A stretch of DNA of 64,000 nt from positions 62,001 to 126,000 of the IMG/VR virus record IMGVR_UViG_3300042402_002564; one strand, given 5' to 3'. This document shows positions 52,728 to 58,304 of this stretch, piece after piece. Position 1 is the first letter of the stretch. Every line of letters begins with the position of its first letter. Under the pieces are notes generated by a model that was given only the letters and a program-made list of their open reading frames with translations, was not told the origin of the DNA and ran no database searches. Made by a program: the position numbers and the translations under genes.

Positions 52728-52806
52728 TCCACTTACAAAACTGCACATCAGGTGCCTTGCGAGGCACTTTTTTTATGCTATAATTGCTTTATGAAATCAA
52801 AGACCG

Positions 52807-53764
52807 ATGACTCTCCTTGACCGCTACAAAAACTGGACTCGCAAACAGTACAACAAACACTATTTTGAGTATGATTTCAAACCCCATTTCAAGTGGAATC
52901 CATTTGACACTGATAATGATTGGGTCTATGATAATGAGAAGTGGAGAAACTTCATTTGGGGGTGGCAGAGTGTGGGATATGCCTGGGAAGCATGGAGTTA
53001 TTGGATGAGGGATATGAAGTATCAATATAAACTTCCTCATGCGATTTGGTCAGAACTAAATGATGGTTATATGGCAATGTACATTTACTCCTGGACAAAG
53101 AAATGAAGATTTTTTATTATTTTTATCAAGAAGATTATGGTCATGAACTATATCTAAATATCTTCGCTTTTAAGATGTTTAATATATTTCAATTAGAATT
53201 CATGTGGGATGCTTGTCCAACATGGATCCCCTATCTTACGCTATCTTTTTTGGGACATTATGGTAGTCTTATTGGTATTACATTAGGATTTGGTAAATTA
53301 AGGTTCTCTTTTGACTTCCTTGCCTACCAACCCAAAAACTTGGATTATCTTCGTAGGTAGTATGGCAAAGATTAAATACTTCTTCTTAGATTTGTGGTAT
53401 AAGTATAAATCATGGAGATTTGAACGTAAGTGTATTAAACATCTTGGTATGAAGCCACAAAAAATGTATGTGACCAAAGAGCAATATGATGCTTTGGTTG
53501 AAGCAATCAACAAACCACCAGACCCTAAAGTAGTAGAAAGATTTAAAGAAATTATGAATAGAAAAGCACCTTGGGAAGATTAGTATGAAGGTTCCAACTA
53601 AAGCAGAACTAATACATCTTAAAATTCAAGCAGCAATGCGAGAGAAGAATTTTCCTGATGATGAGATTAAATACTTAGGTGAACGTGAAGGAACACATTG
53701 GTATCTTGTTGCTGGGAAATATGAAGTTCCAGTAGAAGATATTGTCGAATTTGAGGGAACATAA
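52807..53764 (+). CDS. Four small hypothetical proteins
   Basis: ORFs behind an early promoter at 52727-52784. Confidence 0.5.
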
Positions 53765-54138
53765 TGAACAATCAATACGATAGAGAAGAAGAACAAATAG
53801 AGTATACATTTAATGTAAACACTTCTGGAATGATTGAGATTGAATCCAAATCAATTCCAACTACAGAAACAATTATTAACAATGCTGCAGAGAAGGCAGC
53901 AAAAATTTTAAATGTTGACATAACCAATATAGATAAGATTAAGTTTTTAAGATTGTATCTTGCACTTTACTCATTGTGTGGATATAATAAAGAAAATCAA
54001 TCTGAGGGAGATAATATGATGCGTTGGTGGTTAAATACTGATAATAAACATCTTGGTTATGTTCCAGCAAATTATCTTCAACATCCAATTCAAATGGATG
54101 AAATTATTCGTTACTTAGAATCATTTAACAATCATTAA
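53764..54138 (+). CDS. Xre/MbcA/ParS-like antitoxin C-terminal domain protein
   Basis: FLRLYLALYSL...MRWWLNTDNKHLGYVPANYL...IIRYLE matches the W-L-x-x-x-N-x-x-L-G-x-x-P pattern. Confidence 0.65.
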   Translation: MNNQYDREEEQIEYTFNVNTSGMIEIESKSIPTTETIINNAAEKAAKILNVDITNIDKIKFLRLYLALYSLCGYNKENQSEGDNMMRWWLNTDNKHLGYVPANYLQHPIQMDEIIRYLESFNNH

Positions 54139-54145
54139 TTCAATT

Positions 54146-54692
54146 ATGCTCTCTACACAATACCGTCTTAAACTTCAGGCAATCTGCGATAAAATTGTTA
54201 ATCAAGAATCTGTAGATTTACATGATATGATTTGGGCAGAGAAACTTGCAAAAGTAAATCGAACTGCTGCAACAATGCTACGTCAGGCACGAAGAACCGC
54301 AGAGAATCCAGATATGCAAGAAGGAGATTTAGATGATTTTTTAAATCAACTTGATATTGGTGGTATTGGGCATGAGCGTAAAGGTATTCGCAGATTTGAT
54401 ACTGTTGATGAAATTGTAGACTTTTTTACGGAGGATAAACCCGATGACTGGAGACAGAGAGACTAAATCAACTGAGAGTTATGAACAACTTATTGAAAGG
54501 TTCAATAAGAGGACAACTCAATTAGAGATACGAAAAGAACAACTTCATCCCATGTATTCTGAATACGTTCAAATTGAAAGAGATTTAGAACGTTTACGTG
54601 GTTCCTTACAGGTTGCCGAATATCTTGCTTATGGTACATTACCAGGTGATGGTAATCATGATGGTATGAGACATCATAAACCGAGGAGATGA
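54146..54692 (+). CDS. Two hypothetical proteins
   Basis: ORFs 54146..54466 and 54444..54692. Confidence 0.55.
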
Positions 54693-54696
54693 TGTC

Positions 54697-54897
54697 ATGA
54701 AGACACTTCAAGATTTTTTGTCAGAGGAAGAAAAGTCTTCCAAAAGAACAGCAGAATATCAAAATGAACCAAAGGGTAATGAGAAGTGCTCTAATTGTAA
54801 TATGTGGCGAGAACCAAATGAATGTACTGCTGTAAAAGGAAAAATCTCTCCCGATGGTTGGTGTAAGTGGCATCAGTATGACCGAAAAAATCAGTGA
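54697..54897 (+). CDS. High-potential iron-sulfur protein (HiPIP)-like
   Basis: YQ..P...C-x2-C-x8-C-x12-C with VKGKISPDGWC; RBS GAGGAG. Confidence 0.8.
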   Translation: MKTLQDFLSEEEKSSKRTAEYQNEPKGNEKCSNCNMWREPNECTAVKGKISPDGWCKWHQYDRKNQ

Positions 54898-55335
54898 TTG
54901 GGATTTAATGAAGAAGGGAGATTCTGTAACTTTTCTCAGTTGTAGTACCTTCCAAATTCAATGGGGTAATAATGACGACCCATATCCAATTTTAGAAGAA
55001 GGTAAGATTTATACTGTTGAAGATGTAAGAATACATAGTTTACACACCAAAATCAAACTAATTGGTTATGATGGGTGGTATAATAGTGTTTGTTTTATAA
55101 GGAACGAATTATGAATGCAATTTTATGGAGTGGTACATTAGACAATCGTTATGAATGTACTGTAGAGCATACATCTCAATACAAAGGTCAATTACGTATC
55201 TTTGATAATCAGAACAACTCAGTTCTTTTGATTGAAGAAGTTGGTGTATCTTATGGTGCAACCTTTGGTGCTGATATGGGTGATGTATCTGATTGGCAAA
55301 ATCGCTGTGCAGAGTTTATTGATTCAATGACATGA
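54878..55335 (+). CDS. Two small hypothetical proteins
   Basis: Coupled ORFs. Confidence 0.5.
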
Positions 55336-55871
55336 GTGATATTCAAATTTATGATGATTATCTACCAGAGAATTATTTTAATCATCTACAAAATATTCTA
55401 TTGCATAAAGACCCAAACTTTGCATGGTATTATAATGATAATGTAGTCGATGAGAATGATCAGGACTTCCAATTTGTACATGTGTTCTATAAGAATCATG
55501 TACCAAATAGTCCTTATTTTAATGAACTCTCATTTGCGATTCAATCATTAAATCCATTGTCATTGATACGCATTAAGGCAAATCTATTACCACGTACACC
55601 AGAACATATTGAACATGGTATGCATGTAGATGTTCCTGATTCTGATTGTTCACATCTAAAGACTGCAATTCTATACATGAATACCAATAATGGTTATACA
55701 CTGTTTGAGGATGGTACAAAGGTCAATAGTGTGGCAAATCGTATGGTCATCTTCCCTACGCAAATGCATCATACTGGTGCCACATGTACGGATGAGAAGG
55801 TAAGAATAGTCATTAACTTTAATTACCTGTGCCAATCACAATTCAATTTACCAGGAATTCAAAATGGATAA
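55332..55871 (+). CDS. 2OG-Fe(II) oxygenase
   Basis: RIKANL, HVD, TAILYMNTNNGYT, HTG and RIVINFNY. Confidence 0.85.
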   Translation: MSDIQIYDDYLPENYFNHLQNILLHKDPNFAWYYNDNVVDENDQDFQFVHVFYKNHVPNSPYFNELSFAIQSLNPLSLIRIKANLLPRTPEHIEHGMHVDVPDSDCSHLKTAILYMNTNNGYTLFEDGTKVNSVANRMVIFPTQMHHTGATCTDEKVRIVINFNYLCQSQFNLPGIQNG

Positions 55872-56362: not shown

Positions 56363-57328
56363 ATGAGTAAGACCTATACAGAGAGAATGCAGTATTTAAA
56401 CCGAACTGGTTTGTTCAGTGGTATTACTCATGCCCTTTTAGAAGATAAGGTTAGGAATAATTTTTATAGTGATATTTTAAAAAGTGCAAAAGGTAAACGT
56501 GTTGTTGATGTAGGTTCTGGGAGTGGACTCTTAGGATTCCTAGCATTAAAGCACGGGGCAGAACATGTTACTTTTATAGAACAGGATAAGGTATCATCAA
56601 ATCATATTATGAATGTGATTCGTAGGATGAAGATTGATGAATCAAAGTATCGTGTGATTAATGATGAATTTGTTGCAAGTCGTTGGGATGAATATGAACT
56701 CATTAATCCTGATATGATTGTACATGAAATTATTGGTAATTTTATTTGGAATGAAACAATGACTTGTGCATTTGATGTTCATTTACCAAATGTAGAGATT
56801 ATACCAAGTTCTTATCAATTAAAGTATAGTATTGTTCCACTTACTGATGAAGGATTTAAATTCTTTTGTGATTATGAGAATAGGAATGCAAAGAATAAAC
56901 CAGACCTTGATGTTGATTTAGTAGGGTCTGTATTTGTTGATTATTATACAAAGGTCTTAAGTCTTTATAATACTGAGGTTAGTACAAAACCATCAATATT
57001 GAATCATATAAGAGATAAGGATATTTTAAATGATATCTATTCTAAGGCAATTCATCATTATGACCATGTAGTGAATATTAATGATGAGAATGACTTTAAT
57101 CATAAAAGAAGAGTTAAATTCAAGTTACCTAAAACAAAACGTCCTTATTTAATTCTATGTGAACCATTTGTTCATCATGGTGAGTATACACTTGAGTTTA
57201 AGTCTACCTCATCATTTAATGGTTATAATCAACCTATCTTAGTTCCACCTAATTTAAAGTGTAAGTATTATGAATATGTTTTTGATATTCAACATACTTA
57301 TACGAAGATAGATAATTATTATGCGTAA
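56363..57328 (+). CDS. Class I SAM methyltransferase, PRMT-like
   Basis: LLEDKVRNNFY, VVDVGSGSGLL, FIE and DMIVHEIIGNFIWNE. Confidence 0.8.
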   Translation: MSKTYTERMQYLNRTGLFSGITHALLEDKVRNNFYSDILKSAKGKRVVDVGSGSGLLGFLALKHGAEHVTFIEQDKVSSNHIMNVIRRMKIDESKYRVINDEFVASRWDEYELINPDMIVHEIIGNFIWNETMTCAFDVHLPNVEIIPSSYQLKYSIVPLTDEGFKFFCDYENRNAKNKPDLDVDLVGSVFVDYYTKVLSLYNTEVSTKPSILNHIRDKDILNDIYSKAIHHYDHVVNINDENDFNHKRRVKFKLPKTKRPYLILCEPFVHHGEYTLEFKSTSSFNGYNQPILVPPNLKCKYYEYVFDIQHTYTKIDNYYA

Positions 57329-57338
57329 GATGTTTTAA

Positions 57339-58304
57339 ATGGCAAAATATTCGGAACGAATGATTCATGAGAATCAAAGACCAAATGGTTATAATGGCAT
57401 TTGTTTTGGTCTATTAGAAGATGCCGCAAGAAATAAGTTTTATGATGAATCACTCAAAAGAGCAAAGGGTAAACGTGTTGTTGATGTAGGTTCTGGTAGT
57501 GGATTGTTAGGGTTTTTAGCATTAAAACACGGGGCAAAGCATGTTACTTTTATTGAGCAGAATATTGTATCTTATTCTCATATCAGAAGAGTATCTGAAA
57601 TCATGAAGATTGATAAGTCCCGTTATCGTATCATTAATGATGAATTTGTTGCAAGTCGTTGGGATGAATATGATTTAAAAAACCCCGATATGATTGTACA
57701 TGAATTAGTTGGTAGTTATATTTGGAATGATACAATTGGACAAGCATTTAATCAGTTTATACCAAACGTAGAGATTATACCAAATTTATATGAATTAAAG
57801 TTTAGTATTATTCCTTTAAGCGAATCTGGTTTTAATTACCTTCGTAAGTATCAGAATGAGAAGTCTATTGAGAAGAGAAGATTCCTTGATGTACGTGTTC
57901 CTATTGATAAGAAGTTTATTGCTTATTATGAAAATGTTTTAAATGATTATGATTATGAGATAGGTATCGTTCCTAGAATAATGAGGTCATTGCATGATGA
58001 GTTGTTTAATAAACTATACTCAAAGGATAGAATAGAGTATTATACACATGTATTTGATATTAATAAAGAGAAGGATTATAAGAGTAATACTATTGCATCG
58101 TTTAATTTACCTAAGACAGATAATCCTTATTTAATCTTTATTCATCCGTATCTTCACTCTAAGAAGAATACATTAGACTTTGTAGAGAGTACCTCTTTTA
58201 GTGGTCATCGTAAACCTATACTGATTCCACCTAAAGCGAATTGTAATAAGTTAAGGTATGATGTATTGAAGAATTATATGACGATTGATGATGTAAAAGT
58301 ATAG
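57339..58304 (+). CDS. Class I SAM methyltransferase, PRMT-like paralog
   Basis: LLEDAARNKFY, VVDVGSGSGLL and DMIVHELVGSYIWND; same length as its neighbour (321 aa). Confidence 0.8.
   Translation: MAKYSERMIHENQRPNGYNGICFGLLEDAARNKFYDESLKRAKGKRVVDVGSGSGLLGFLALKHGAKHVTFIEQNIVSYSHIRRVSEIMKIDKSRYRIINDEFVASRWDEYDLKNPDMIVHELVGSYIWNDTIGQAFNQFIPNVEIIPNLYELKFSIIPLSESGFNYLRKYQNEKSIEKRRFLDVRVPIDKKFIAYYENVLNDYDYEIGIVPRIMRSLHDELFNKLYSKDRIEYYTHVFDINKEKDYKSNTIASFNLPKTDNPYLIFIHPYLHSKKNTLDFVESTSFSGHRKPILIPPKANCNKLRYDVLKNYMTIDDVKV

What the first reader, a model, noticed from the sequence alone, without database searches (positions are those of the whole stretch)
54697..54897. HiPIP-like [4Fe-4S] protein with a T4 capsid-targeting-like leader instead of a Tat signal
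Seen: a C-x2-C-x8-C-x12-C domain ending GWC, preceded only by MKTLQDFLSEE. Known: cellular HiPIPs are periplasmic and carry Tat signals, while T4 internal head proteins begin with an MKT(F/Y)xEF..E capsid-targeting sequence that gp21 cleaves after L/I-x-E. Inference: this may be a redox Fe-S protein packaged in the head and injected with the DNA, possibly to alter host electron flow or protect against oxidation. Caveat: no clear late promoter lies directly upstream.
Basis: partly seen in the sequence, partly recalled or inferred. Interest (0 to 1): 0.75.

Follow-up and report, generated by a model that had tools for sequence, protein, structure and literature searches.

The report
Phage HiPIP with capsid-targeting leader
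A freshwater cyanophage encodes a tiny iron-sulfur electron-carrier protein whose bacterial export signal is replaced by the ten-residue tag that phage T4 uses to load proteins into its head, so it is probably carried in the virus particle.

Summary
The ORF is real (window 54697-54897, 66 aa) and under strong purifying selection. Residues 12-60 are a PioC-type minimal HiPIP. It has the same C-x2-C-x8-C-x12-C spacing, a profile E-value of 2.4e-13 to PioC, and a confident model whose best PDB matches are all HiPIPs.

Cellular relatives carry twin-arginine signals. This protein instead starts MKTLQDFLSE, 6/10 identical to the T4 IPII/IPIII capsid-targeting sequence MKTYQEFIAE, with the residues T4 needs at positions 4, 7, 8 and 10.

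In the 246.5-kb genome this leader occurs four times in six frames, always straight after a start Met (0 in 30 simulations). The same DNA pattern finds ipII and ipIII in T4.

One other carrier lies in the prohead-core gene cluster. Another is a homolog of the cyanophage NMNAT/cytidyltransferase repeatedly found in virion proteomes. The genome encodes gp21-type protease and gp22 scaffold.

Elsewhere the HiPIP domain is fused to prohead proteases, MuF, DUF2213 and GH19.

Packaging, cleavage after Glu10, cluster content and function are all untested. The window copy lacks a late-promoter motif that most relatives have.

The parts
54697..54897 (+). Complete ORF, 66 aa plus stop: leader followed by a PioC-type HiPIP domain.
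54697..54726 (+). Leader M1-E10 (MKTLQDFLSE), similar to the T4 capsid-targeting sequence. L8-S9-E10 is the only L/I-x-E site in the protein and is the predicted gp21-type cleavage point.
   Evidence: In the model it has pLDDT about 60, forms a helix at residues 4-12, and lies outside the HiPIP core.
54730..54876 (+). HiPIP core, residues 12-60. It aligns to mature PioC residues 3-51.
   Evidence: pLDDT is 90-97.
54787..54864 (+). Span holding the four predicted [4Fe-4S] ligands: C31 (54787-89), C34 (54796-98), C43 (54823-25) and C56 (54862-64).
   Evidence: C31 and C34 are invariant and C43 and C56 are at least 90% conserved in 133 sequences.
54683..54688 (+). GAGGAG ribosome-binding site, 8 nt before the ATG. 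The stop of the upstream ORF (54690-54692) lies between them.
54146..54466 (+). phrog_507 gene (106 aa), a core cyanomyovirus gene. In relatives it heads the unit phrog_507-(small ORF)-HiPIP.
54444..54692 (+). phrog_10366 gene (82 aa) between phrog_507 and the HiPIP gene. It is absent at this position in S-SRM01.
54115..54145 (+). Site that corresponds to the late-promoter-like element of relatives (AATAAATA 29 nt before the phrog_507 ATG). The motif is not intact here.
52750..52784 (+). Terminator-like hairpin followed by a sigma-70-like promoter (TTGCGA-16-TATAAT with TG). It is the only obvious start of the gap-free run of small genes 52807 onward that contains the HiPIP gene.

Best explanation
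The gene encodes a minimal PioC-type high-potential iron-sulfur protein. It has four Cys ligands for one [4Fe-4S] cluster and a conserved aromatic shield.

Its ancestral twin-arginine export signal has been replaced by a ten-residue T4-type capsid-targeting sequence, M-K-[ST]-[FL]-x-[EQD]-F-[LI]-x-E.

Inferred mechanism, in order:
1. The holo-protein folds in the cytoplasm of the infected cyanobacterium.
2. The leader docks it onto the gp22/gp67-type scaffolding core of the prohead.
3. The gp21-type protease cuts after L8-S9-E10 and frees a 56-aa, 6.6-kDa, mildly basic HiPIP inside the head. This is almost exactly the size of mature PioC.
4. The small, compact, oxygen-tolerant protein leaves with the DNA at the next infection.

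What it does there is not known. The most likely role is a one-electron redox partner or sensor acting at the very start of infection, or a redox buffer for the packaged DNA.

Shown here: the HiPIP fold and ligands; the leader and its recurrence; the protease and scaffold genes; and virion detection of another protein with the same leader.

Inferred: packaging of this protein, its cleavage, its cluster content, its ejection and its function.
For: HiPIP identity:
- Pfam HIPIP 22.9 bits against a cut-off of 22.
- Profile hit to PioC 6xyv at E 2.4e-13 with identical Cys spacing.
- AF2 model with pLDDT 87. Foldseek top hit is PioC (TM 0.79, rmsd 1.4 A) and the next 15 are all HiPIPs.
- Y21, C31 and C34 are invariant; P25, P40, C43, V46, G48, G54, W55 and C56 are at least 90% conserved.

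Leader:
- The T4 IPII/IPIII CTS is MKTYQEFIAE. In T4, positions 4 and 7 govern targeting and 8 and 10 govern processing, and the cleavage motif is L/I-x-E (PMC9026906). The window has L4, F7, L8 and E10.
- In G000 the motif occurs 4 times in six frames, each time directly after a start Met on the coding strand. It occurred 0 times in 30 Markov simulations, and a looser pattern adds nothing.
- The codons differ between the four copies, so conservation is at protein level.
- In T4 the same DNA pattern hits only ipII, ipIII and 61.1, with 0 hits for the reversed control.
- The four G000 carriers are the HiPIP; a 106-aa phrog_1742 protein between the portal/gp67-like genes and gp21/gp22/gp23; a 60-aa basic ORF; and a 196-aa homolog of the cyanophage NMNAT/cytidyltransferase.
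- That NMNAT starts MKSFLQFLKE in S-SCSM1 and MKSFSQFLTE in P-SSM2. It was detected in virion proteomes of S-SCSM1, S-CBWM1 and S-CREM2 (PMC9602691 and PMC10665884).
- gp23 has L-M-E56 at the position of the T4 maturation site.

Homologs and neighbours:
- Diverged HiPIP homologs keep the leader and cellular ones have RR signals.
- HiPIP genes sit next to other leader genes in L023, L025, L034/35 and L028.
- The HiPIP domain is fused to Peptidase_S78, Phage_Mu_F, DUF2213 and GH19.
- In viral structure models it is fused to prohead protease, XkdF, SppA, zeta toxin and ParB.

Timing:
- Late-promoter-like NATAAATA lies 27-32 nt before four other leader genes and before the first gene of the operon that holds the fifth, phrog_1742.
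- It lies 29 nt before the phrog_507-HiPIP unit in S-SRM01 and in about 47 of 72 IMG/VR relatives.
- Plasmid-expressed IPIII fusions are packaged in T4, so late timing is not strictly required.
Against: - There are no virion data for this protein or for any phage HiPIP.
- The window copy has no NATAAATA within 8.7 kb upstream. It lies in a gap-free run of small genes behind a sigma-70-like promoter, which looks early.
- L034 also has a TGnTATAAT promoter ahead of its unit.
- T4 61.1 and the G000 60-aa ORF carry the leader inside replication-gene clusters and are not known virion proteins.
- The phrog_1742 homolog was not flagged as a virion protein in S-SCSM1.
- Syn9 has no match to the leader pattern, even with one mismatch, so the signal is not universal in Kyanoviridae.
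- About 31 'bare' HiPIP homologs have no leader at all.
- The authors of the NMNAT proteomes could not exclude carry-over contamination.
- The Pfam score is only just above threshold.
- Metal content cannot be read from sequence.
Confidence: 0.55

Rival explanations
1. The protein is a cytoplasmic auxiliary electron carrier. It would be made early, stay in the infected cell and serve a phage or host redox enzyme, for example one of the neighbouring 2OG-Fe(II) oxygenases. Under this reading the N-terminal ten residues are inherited baggage or a simple helix with no packaging role for this protein.
For: - There is a sigma-70-like promoter plus terminator at 52750-52784 and no late motif upstream in the window.
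- 2OG-Fe(II)-oxygenase genes lie within 0-1.8 kb downstream in the window (55332-55871), L024, L030 and L032/33.
- Leaderless HiPIP homologs exist in phage-like contexts.
Against: - The leader is under purifying selection at protein level with near-saturated synonymous change. It keeps exactly the positions T4 needs.
- Most relatives have a late-type motif ahead of the unit.
- The 2OG-oxygenase neighbourhood also exists in Syn9 next to phrog_507 without any HiPIP. It therefore tracks phrog_507, not the HiPIP.
- No cytoplasmic high-potential partner is known in cyanobacteria (own knowledge).
- This rival is not exclusive of packaging.
Confidence: 0.3
2. The shared leader is a real signal in these phages but has a purpose other than head targeting. 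Examples would be recruitment to a replication or assembly compartment, to a chaperone or to a membrane. The resemblance to the T4 CTS would then be convergent or would reflect a broader role.
For: - T4 61.1 and G000:192188 carry the leader in replication-gene clusters.
- phrog_1742 is not listed as a virion protein in S-SCSM1.
- Syn9 lacks the leader altogether.
Against: - In T4 these ten residues are sufficient to load foreign proteins into the head (PMC9026906).
- The only carrier with proteomic data, the NMNAT, is found in virions of several cyanophages.
- One carrier lies inside the prohead-core operon, and the gp21 and gp22 homologs are present.
- Small scaffold-like proteins are expected to be degraded and lost, like T4 gp68, which has 0 copies in the mature head (table).
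Confidence: 0.15
3. The domain has the HiPIP fold but no longer holds a [4Fe-4S] cluster. It would be a Zn-binding or purely structural four-Cys knot, used as a small hard module in virion proteins.
For: - It recurs as a fusion partner of proteases, MuF, lysins and giant multidomain proteins, which is more typical of a structural or adaptor module.
- The Pfam score is marginal.
Against: - All four ligands and the aromatic residues that shield the cluster in HiPIPs (Y21, W/F37, W55) are conserved across 133 sequences that include bona fide Tat-exported cellular HiPIPs.
- It is 37% identical to PioC over the core, with rmsd 1.4 A.
Confidence: 0.1

Closest known systems
PioC, the 54-residue HiPIP of Rhodopseudomonas palustris TIE-1 (PDB 6XYV/7A4L/7A58)
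   Same: - The Cys spacing is the same, C-x2-C-x8-C-x12-C.
- The conserved Y-Q, P-x-G and G-W-C motifs are shared.
- It is 37% identical over 49 aligned residues, with TM 0.79 and rmsd 1.4 A to the model.
- The predicted mature size is nearly the same, 56 against 54 aa.
   Different: PioC is made with a twin-arginine signal and works in the periplasm in photoferrotrophic iron oxidation (own knowledge of the pio operon). The phage protein has no RR motif and no hydrophobic signal, only a ten-residue T4-CTS-like leader, and it is encoded by a cyanophage.
T4 internal head proteins IPII and IPIII and their capsid-targeting sequence
   Same: - The leader has the same length and pattern. MKTYQEFIAE in T4 compares with MKTLQDFLSE here, and relatives reach 7-8 of 10 identical.
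- Positions 4 and 7 are hydrophobic or aromatic, and L/I-x-E occupies 8-10.
- The predicted cargo is small and mildly basic.
- Several unrelated cargo genes share one leader.
- gp21-type protease and gp22-type scaffold are present.
   Different: - The cargo is a cofactor-bearing redox protein, not a DNA-binding or anti-restriction protein.
- There is no sequence similarity beyond the leader.
- The window gene is not behind a recognisable late promoter.
- Packaging has not been demonstrated.
Virion-carried enzymes: T4 Alt and the cyanomyovirus NMNAT/cytidyltransferase
   Same: These are non-structural proteins carried in the particle. The cyanophage NMNAT has the same leader as the HiPIP, and its G000 homolog is one of the four leader ORFs.
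   Different: These are enzymes of 40-75 kDa. The NMNAT leader had not been linked to the T4 CTS in the papers read here.
MuF-fused effectors and 'polyvalent proteins' of phages (Iyer et al. 2017, PMC5512222)
   Same: In other phages the HiPIP domain occurs in the same kinds of architecture. These include Phage_Mu_F, prohead protease, DUF2213, ParB_N, zeta toxin and GH19, in proteins of 300 to 1573 aa.
   Different: The window protein is a stand-alone domain that uses a cleavable leader rather than a fusion. HiPIP and Fe-S domains are not mentioned in that survey.

Membership tests
HiPIP (Pfam PF01355) | Sequence matches the family model above its curated threshold | tested here: met
   The score is 22.9 bits against a cut-off of 22, E 1.1e-4, which is marginal. 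It is reinforced by the profile hit to PioC at E 2.4e-13 and to two further HiPIP structures.
HiPIP (Pfam PF01355) | Four Cys ligands in the HiPIP order and spacing, with the conserved aromatic shield | tested here: met
   C31, C34, C43 and C56 have the same spacing as PioC. Y21, C31 and C34 are invariant, and C43, W55 and C56 are at least 90% conserved in 133 homologs.
HiPIP (Pfam PF01355) | HiPIP fold | tested here: met
   The AF2 model has pLDDT 87. The 16 best PDB matches are all HiPIPs, with PioC first.
HiPIP (Pfam PF01355) | Binds one [4Fe-4S] cluster cycling 2+/3+ at high potential | not testable with these tools
   This needs recombinant protein, UV-vis, EPR and voltammetry.
HiPIP (Pfam PF01355) | Twin-arginine signal and periplasmic location (typical of cellular members) | tested here: not met
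   No RR motif or hydrophobic stretch precedes the domain. By a rough regular-expression sort, 62 of 162 retrieved homologs have such signals. This concerns location, not fold membership.
T4-type CTS-bearing internal head proteins | N-terminal ten-residue leader resembling MKTYQEFIAE, hydrophobic at positions 4 and 7 | tested here: met
   It is 6 of 10 identical, and relatives reach 7-8 of 10. L/F is at position 4 and F at 7. The T4 requirements come from PMC9026906.
T4-type CTS-bearing internal head proteins | L/I-x-E cleavage motif at positions 8-10 | tested here: met
   L8-S9-E10 is the only such site in the protein. The motif is cited.
T4-type CTS-bearing internal head proteins | The same leader is shared by several unrelated proteins of one phage | tested here: met
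   There are four ORFs in G000, three in S-SRM01, three in P-SSM2 and two in S-SCSM1. The reversed-pattern controls gave 0.
T4-type CTS-bearing internal head proteins | The phage encodes the gp21 prohead protease and gp22 scaffolding core | tested here: met
   Peptidase_S77 scores E 2.6e-40 and T4_CASP scores E 1.3e-75 in G000.
T4-type CTS-bearing internal head proteins | The protein is present in virions with its leader removed | not testable with these tools
   Support is indirect only: the NMNAT with the same leader is found in virion proteomes.
T4-type CTS-bearing internal head proteins | Made when proheads assemble (late transcription) | tested here: inconclusive
   The window has no late motif. 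S-SRM01 and about 47 of 72 relatives have AATAAATA 29 nt before the unit.

The most novel reading that the evidence does not exclude
Large T4-like myoviruses of cyanobacteria, and other aquatic myoviruses, may load a [4Fe-4S] HiPIP into the capsid through a capsid-targeting sequence conserved from T4, and deliver it with the DNA. More broadly, the PioC-like HiPIP domain may be an unrecognised, widespread module of head-internal or ejected phage proteins. It occurs stand-alone with a CTS, or fused to prohead protease, MuF, DUF2213, GH19 lysin, zeta toxin, or NMNAT-ParB giant proteins. That would make it the first redox metallocofactor protein known to travel inside a virion.
Probability: 0.4. 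Interest if true: 0.85.

Novelty: new variant of a known kind. Interest (0 to 1): 0.72.

Why it matters
Four consequences follow if this holds.

1. HiPIPs are known as periplasmic electron carriers of purple and iron- or sulfur-oxidising bacteria. A phage-borne, signal-less version with a head-loading tag would be a new biological setting for the family, and possibly a new kind of injected phage factor.

2. The same leader gives a concrete mechanism for a published puzzle: why an NMNAT/cytidyltransferase keeps turning up in cyanophage virion proteomes.

3. It suggests the T4 capsid-targeting system, so far described for T-even phages, is conserved in part of the Kyanoviridae. That would allow packaged proteins to be predicted from sequence alone.

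4. It is directly testable, because S-SRM01 is an isolate with a cultured host and carries an 83% identical copy.

Tried and rejected
- PHROGs gave no family for the HiPIP ORF.
- Megablast of 6 kb around it found no phage record. tblastn found only S-SRM01.
- The precomputed Pfam tag PF28414 on two relatives is 'BAS4 (weak)', a fungal effector family. I treated it as spurious, and it is not in the local library.
The narrow one, A2, returned only close relatives.
- The domain tree has 50 columns and is poorly resolved. Only the clade of 19 leader-bearing sequences (SH-aLRT 95) and the loose grouping of non-Tat forms are usable, and the careful search did not finish.
- Syn9 was scanned as a further proteome-backed test and has no leader match at all.
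- T4 ipII, ipIII and 61.1 show no exact TATAAATA within 120 nt upstream. Absence of an exact motif is therefore weak evidence.
- Contexts of the MuF fusion (P0043) and of a bare form (P0037) were too short to be informative.
- Literature searches linking CTS with cyanophage, or HiPIP with phage, found nothing relevant. The S-SRM01 paper mentions neither HiPIP nor a virion proteome.
- A spurious ORF was rejected on dN/dS.
- No RNA or read data were sought, because the genome is an uncultured IMG/VR record.

Full report
**1. The observation**

The window holds an ORF at 54697-54897 (+) of 66 aa. A GAGGAG ribosome-binding site lies 8 nt before the ATG. The stop of the preceding ORF falls between them, and there is no other in-frame start upstream.

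The gene is real. Against five relatives dN/dS is 0.03-0.05 with saturated synonymous change. The first 11 codons alone show near-saturated synonymous sites but few replacements.

The window is bases 62001-126000 of a complete 246.5-kb virus record with terminal repeats. Its nearest isolate is the freshwater Synechococcus myovirus S-SRM01 (Kyanoviridae), which has an 83% identical copy annotated as hypothetical.

**2. It is a HiPIP of the PioC type**

- Pfam HIPIP scores 22.9 bits against a cut-off of 22.
- A profile of 15 close relatives hits the solved structure of PioC, the 54-residue HiPIP of Rhodopseudomonas palustris, at E 2.4e-13. Profile positions 12-60 align to PioC residues 3-51, with identical Cys spacing. 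Two further HiPIPs follow.
- An exhaustive profile search found 2087 relatives at E up to 0.001.
- In an alignment of 133 of them, Y21, C31 and C34 are invariant. P25, P40, C43, V46, G48, G54, W55 and C56 are at least 90% conserved.
- The AlphaFold model has mean pLDDT 87, with 90-97 for residues 11-60 and about 60 for the first ten residues, which form a separate short helix.
- Its 16 best PDB matches are all HiPIPs. PioC is first, with TM 0.79, rmsd 1.4 A and 37% identity.
- UniProt already auto-labels the S-SRM01 copy as a HiPIP-profile protein.
- Whether the cluster is really bound cannot be tested here.

**3. The leader**

I sorted the retrieved homologs with a rough regular expression.

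- 62 have twin-arginine signals.
- 26 have a short M-K-x-F-x-x-F-[LI]-x-E type start.
- 31 are bare.
- 22 are fusions.

The window protein sits in a clade of 19 (SH-aLRT 95). All of them carry the leader. A looser group holds 75 of the 79 leader, bare and fusion forms but only 14 of the 62 Tat forms. The tree is weak, with only 50 columns.

The leader is therefore conserved well beyond close relatives. It stands exactly where cellular proteins have their export signal.

**4. Comparison with T4**

I read the T4 sequences from the genome record. IPII and IPIII both begin MKTYQEFIAE.

A review of Black's work states three things (PMC9026906).

- These ten residues suffice for head incorporation.
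- Positions 4 and 7 matter for targeting, and positions 8 and 10 for processing.
- gp21 cuts after L/I-x-E.

The window has MKTLQDFLSE, which is 6/10 identical, with L4, F7, L8 and E10. Relatives reach 7/10. LSE at 8-10 is the only L/I-x-E site in the protein, so cleavage would spare the domain. The product would be 56 aa with pI about 8.5, essentially the size of mature PioC.

**5. The leader is a shared signal in this genome**

In all six frames of the 246.5-kb genome the motif K-[ST]-[FYL]-x-[EDQ]-F-[LIVM]-x-E occurs four times. Each occurrence is directly after a Met that opens an ORF on the coding strand. Thirty third-order Markov simulations gave none, and a looser pattern adds no further ORF start. 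The four DNA versions differ at synonymous positions, so selection acts on the peptide.

As a control, the same DNA pattern was run on T4. It hits ipII, ipIII and one more gene, 61.1 (MKTFKEFIKE). The reversed pattern gave no hits in any genome.

S-SRM01 has three hits, P-SSM2 three and S-SCSM1 two. Syn9 has none, even with one mismatch. The signal is therefore not universal in the family.

**6. The other carriers**

(a) G000:170808 is 106 aa, phrog_1742, starting MKSFKQFISE. It lies between the portal and a gp67-like gene on one side and gp21 (Peptidase_S77, E 2.6e-40), gp22 (T4_CASP) and gp23 on the other. This is the place of the T4 prohead-core genes. Homologs occur in 139 cyanophage records, nearly all matching from residue 1.

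(b) G000:211324 is 196 aa, starting MKSFSQFLNE. It is a shortened homolog of the cyanomyovirus 'cytidyltransferase/NMNAT'.
- The full-length proteins start MKSFSQFLTE in P-SSM2 and MKSFLQFLKE in S-SCSM1.
- This protein was found by mass spectrometry in S-SCSM1 virions. According to the same authors it was also found in S-CBWM1 and another estuarine phage, and again in S-CREM2.
- The authors found this puzzling and could not exclude carry-over (PMC9602691, PMC10665884).
- A T4-type CTS on exactly this protein explains the finding. It is the best available evidence that the leader works as a head-loading tag in cyanophages.

(c) G000:192188 is 60 aa, starting MKTFQQFIAE (8/10 identical to T4). 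It is basic and of low complexity, and it lies in the replication cluster, much like T4 61.1.

(d) S-SRM01 and P-SSM2 also have a long, basic, low-complexity leader protein just after nrdB.

gp23 of G000 has L-M-E56 at the position of the T4 maturation site.

**7. Neighbours and fusions of the HiPIP domain elsewhere**

Neighbours:
- In a 50-kb metagenomic contig, the HiPIP gene (MKTLNDFLDE) directly follows a 111-aa gene starting MKTFQEFISE.
- In two others it is directly followed by genes starting MKTFKELSEG or MKTFKEFINE.
- In a large-phage contig, five consecutive genes start with a one-residue-shorter variant (for example MKIFEIITEE and MRYHEIISEA). One of them is a leader-HiPIP-GH19 protein, and they lie next to an NMNAT-like gene.
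- These arrays recall the T-even internal-protein gene clusters.

Fusions:
- The domain is fused to Peptidase_S78 plus ChaB, Phage_Mu_F, DUF2213, NUDIX plus DUF2213, and GH19.
- In viral structure models it is fused to prohead protease, XkdF, SppA, zeta toxin and ParB.
- It also lies inside 1100-1600-aa proteins that start with the NMNAT motif.
- Head proteases, MuF and such giant proteins are the classic carriers of virion-delivered effectors (PMC5512222). That survey does not mention HiPIP.

**8. Timing**

T4-type late promoters are in use here. TATAAATA occurs 17 times on the + strand and once on the - strand of G000, mostly 18-37 nt before gene starts.

NATAAATA lies 27-32 nt before each of the following.
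- G000:211324.
- The gp67-like gene that heads the gp67-like/phrog_1742 operon.
- The S-SRM01 447-aa leader gene.
- PSSM2_211.
- The S-SCSM1 NMNAT.

The window HiPIP has none in 8.7 kb upstream. It lies in a gap-free run of small genes that begins after a terminator and a sigma-70-like promoter at 52750-52784.

However, S-SRM01 and about 47 of 72 IMG/VR relatives have AATAAATA 29 nt before the phrog_507 gene, which heads the unit phrog_507-(small ORF)-HiPIP. Many of those relatives are near-identical, but they fall into several arrangement classes. The window has a degenerate version of that site.

phrog_507 is a core cyanomyovirus gene present in 461 records. In Syn9 it lies between gp23 and gp3.

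In T4, IPIII fusions made from a plasmid are packaged, so late transcription is helpful but not required.

**9. Conclusion and limits**

- The HiPIP assignment is solid.
- The leader is a genuine, shared, protein-level signal.
- That it targets the prohead is the best-supported reading, but it rests on analogy with T4 and on one proteomically supported carrier.
- Packaging of the HiPIP itself, its cleavage, its ejection and its role are inferred.
- The role could be a redox partner or sensor at the start of infection, a reductant for damaged packaged DNA, or merely a hard structural module.
- I found no paper that links the CTS to cyanophages or HiPIPs to phages. The library searched is open-access only.

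Noticed in passing
L018:967-1131 (-), T4 gene 61.1 (NC_000866 18966-19130): T4 gp61.1 is a 54-aa hypothetical protein next to the primase gene. It starts MKTFKEFIKE, a near-perfect CTS (7/10 identical to IPII/IPIII) with I-K-E at positions 8-10. It is the only T4 hit of the leader pattern besides ipII and ipIII.
   Followed up: partly
L004:5189-5371 (+) = G000:C1:192188-192370 (outside the window): This 60-aa basic, Ser/Gly/Asp-rich ORF starts MKTFQQFIAE. It lies just upstream of the DNA polymerase gene. In size, composition and neighbourhood it parallels T4 61.1.
   Followed up: partly
L005:5325-5915 (+) = G000:C1:211324-211914 (outside the window): The G000 homolog of the virion-associated cyanophage NMNAT/cytidyltransferase is only 196 aa. 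It keeps the leader, the N-terminal 85 residues and the C-terminal domain, but lacks the central nucleotidyltransferase core found in P-SSM2_194 and S-SCSM1 ORF91. CATAAATA lies 27 nt before its ATG.
   Followed up: partly
L003:4809-5129 (+) = G000:C1:170808-171128 (outside the window): phrog_1742 (106 aa, leader MKSFKQFISE) lies between a gp67-like gene and the gp21 protease, in the slot of T4 gp68. It occurs in 139 cyanophage records and is always annotated hypothetical, so it is a candidate prohead-core protein.
   Followed up: partly
L028:6444-11597: A large-phage contig (with DnaJ, ClpB and peptide deformylase nearby) has an NMNAT-like gene. After one intervening gene without the leader, five consecutive genes follow that start with related leaders: MKIFEIITEE, MRYHEIISEA, MRITDLSESK, MRFTDFNIINE and MRLRDLYEFS. 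One of them is a HiPIP-GH19 fusion of 617 aa.
   Followed up: partly
L029:8001-17580: Two adjacent giant genes lie on a 198-kb contig. One is 1573 aa, with an NMNAT motif at the start, a weak ParB_N hit and a HiPIP domain at 572-624. The other is 1613 aa with a weak Amidoligase_2 hit. They look like polyvalent virion-delivered proteins.
   Followed up: no
window 55332-55871: PHROGs labels this 179-aa protein 'DNA endonuclease V' (phrog_274, E 2e-55). Pfam points to 2OG-Fe(II) oxygenase instead, below its threshold. The PHROG name looks misleading.
   Followed up: no
window 56363-57328 and 57339-58304: Two tandem 321-aa ORFs have similar N-termini. The first has class-I methyltransferase hits (Cons_hypoth95, PrmA). 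They are probably paralogs.
   Followed up: no
window 53764-54138: This 124-aa ORF has a sub-threshold match to the antitoxin Xre/MbcA/ParS C-terminal toxin-binding domain (22.0 bits against a cut-off of 24.5).
   Followed up: no
G000:C1:166988-170619 (-), outside the window: Two paralogous genes of about 600 aa lie on the minus strand between the portal gene and the gp67-like gene. They are the only minus-strand genes in the head module. Their function was not examined.
   Followed up: no
L116 (Syn9, NC_008296): Syn9 has no ORF matching the leader pattern, even with one mismatch. The CTS-like signal is therefore confined to part of the Kyanoviridae or has diverged there.
   Followed up: partly
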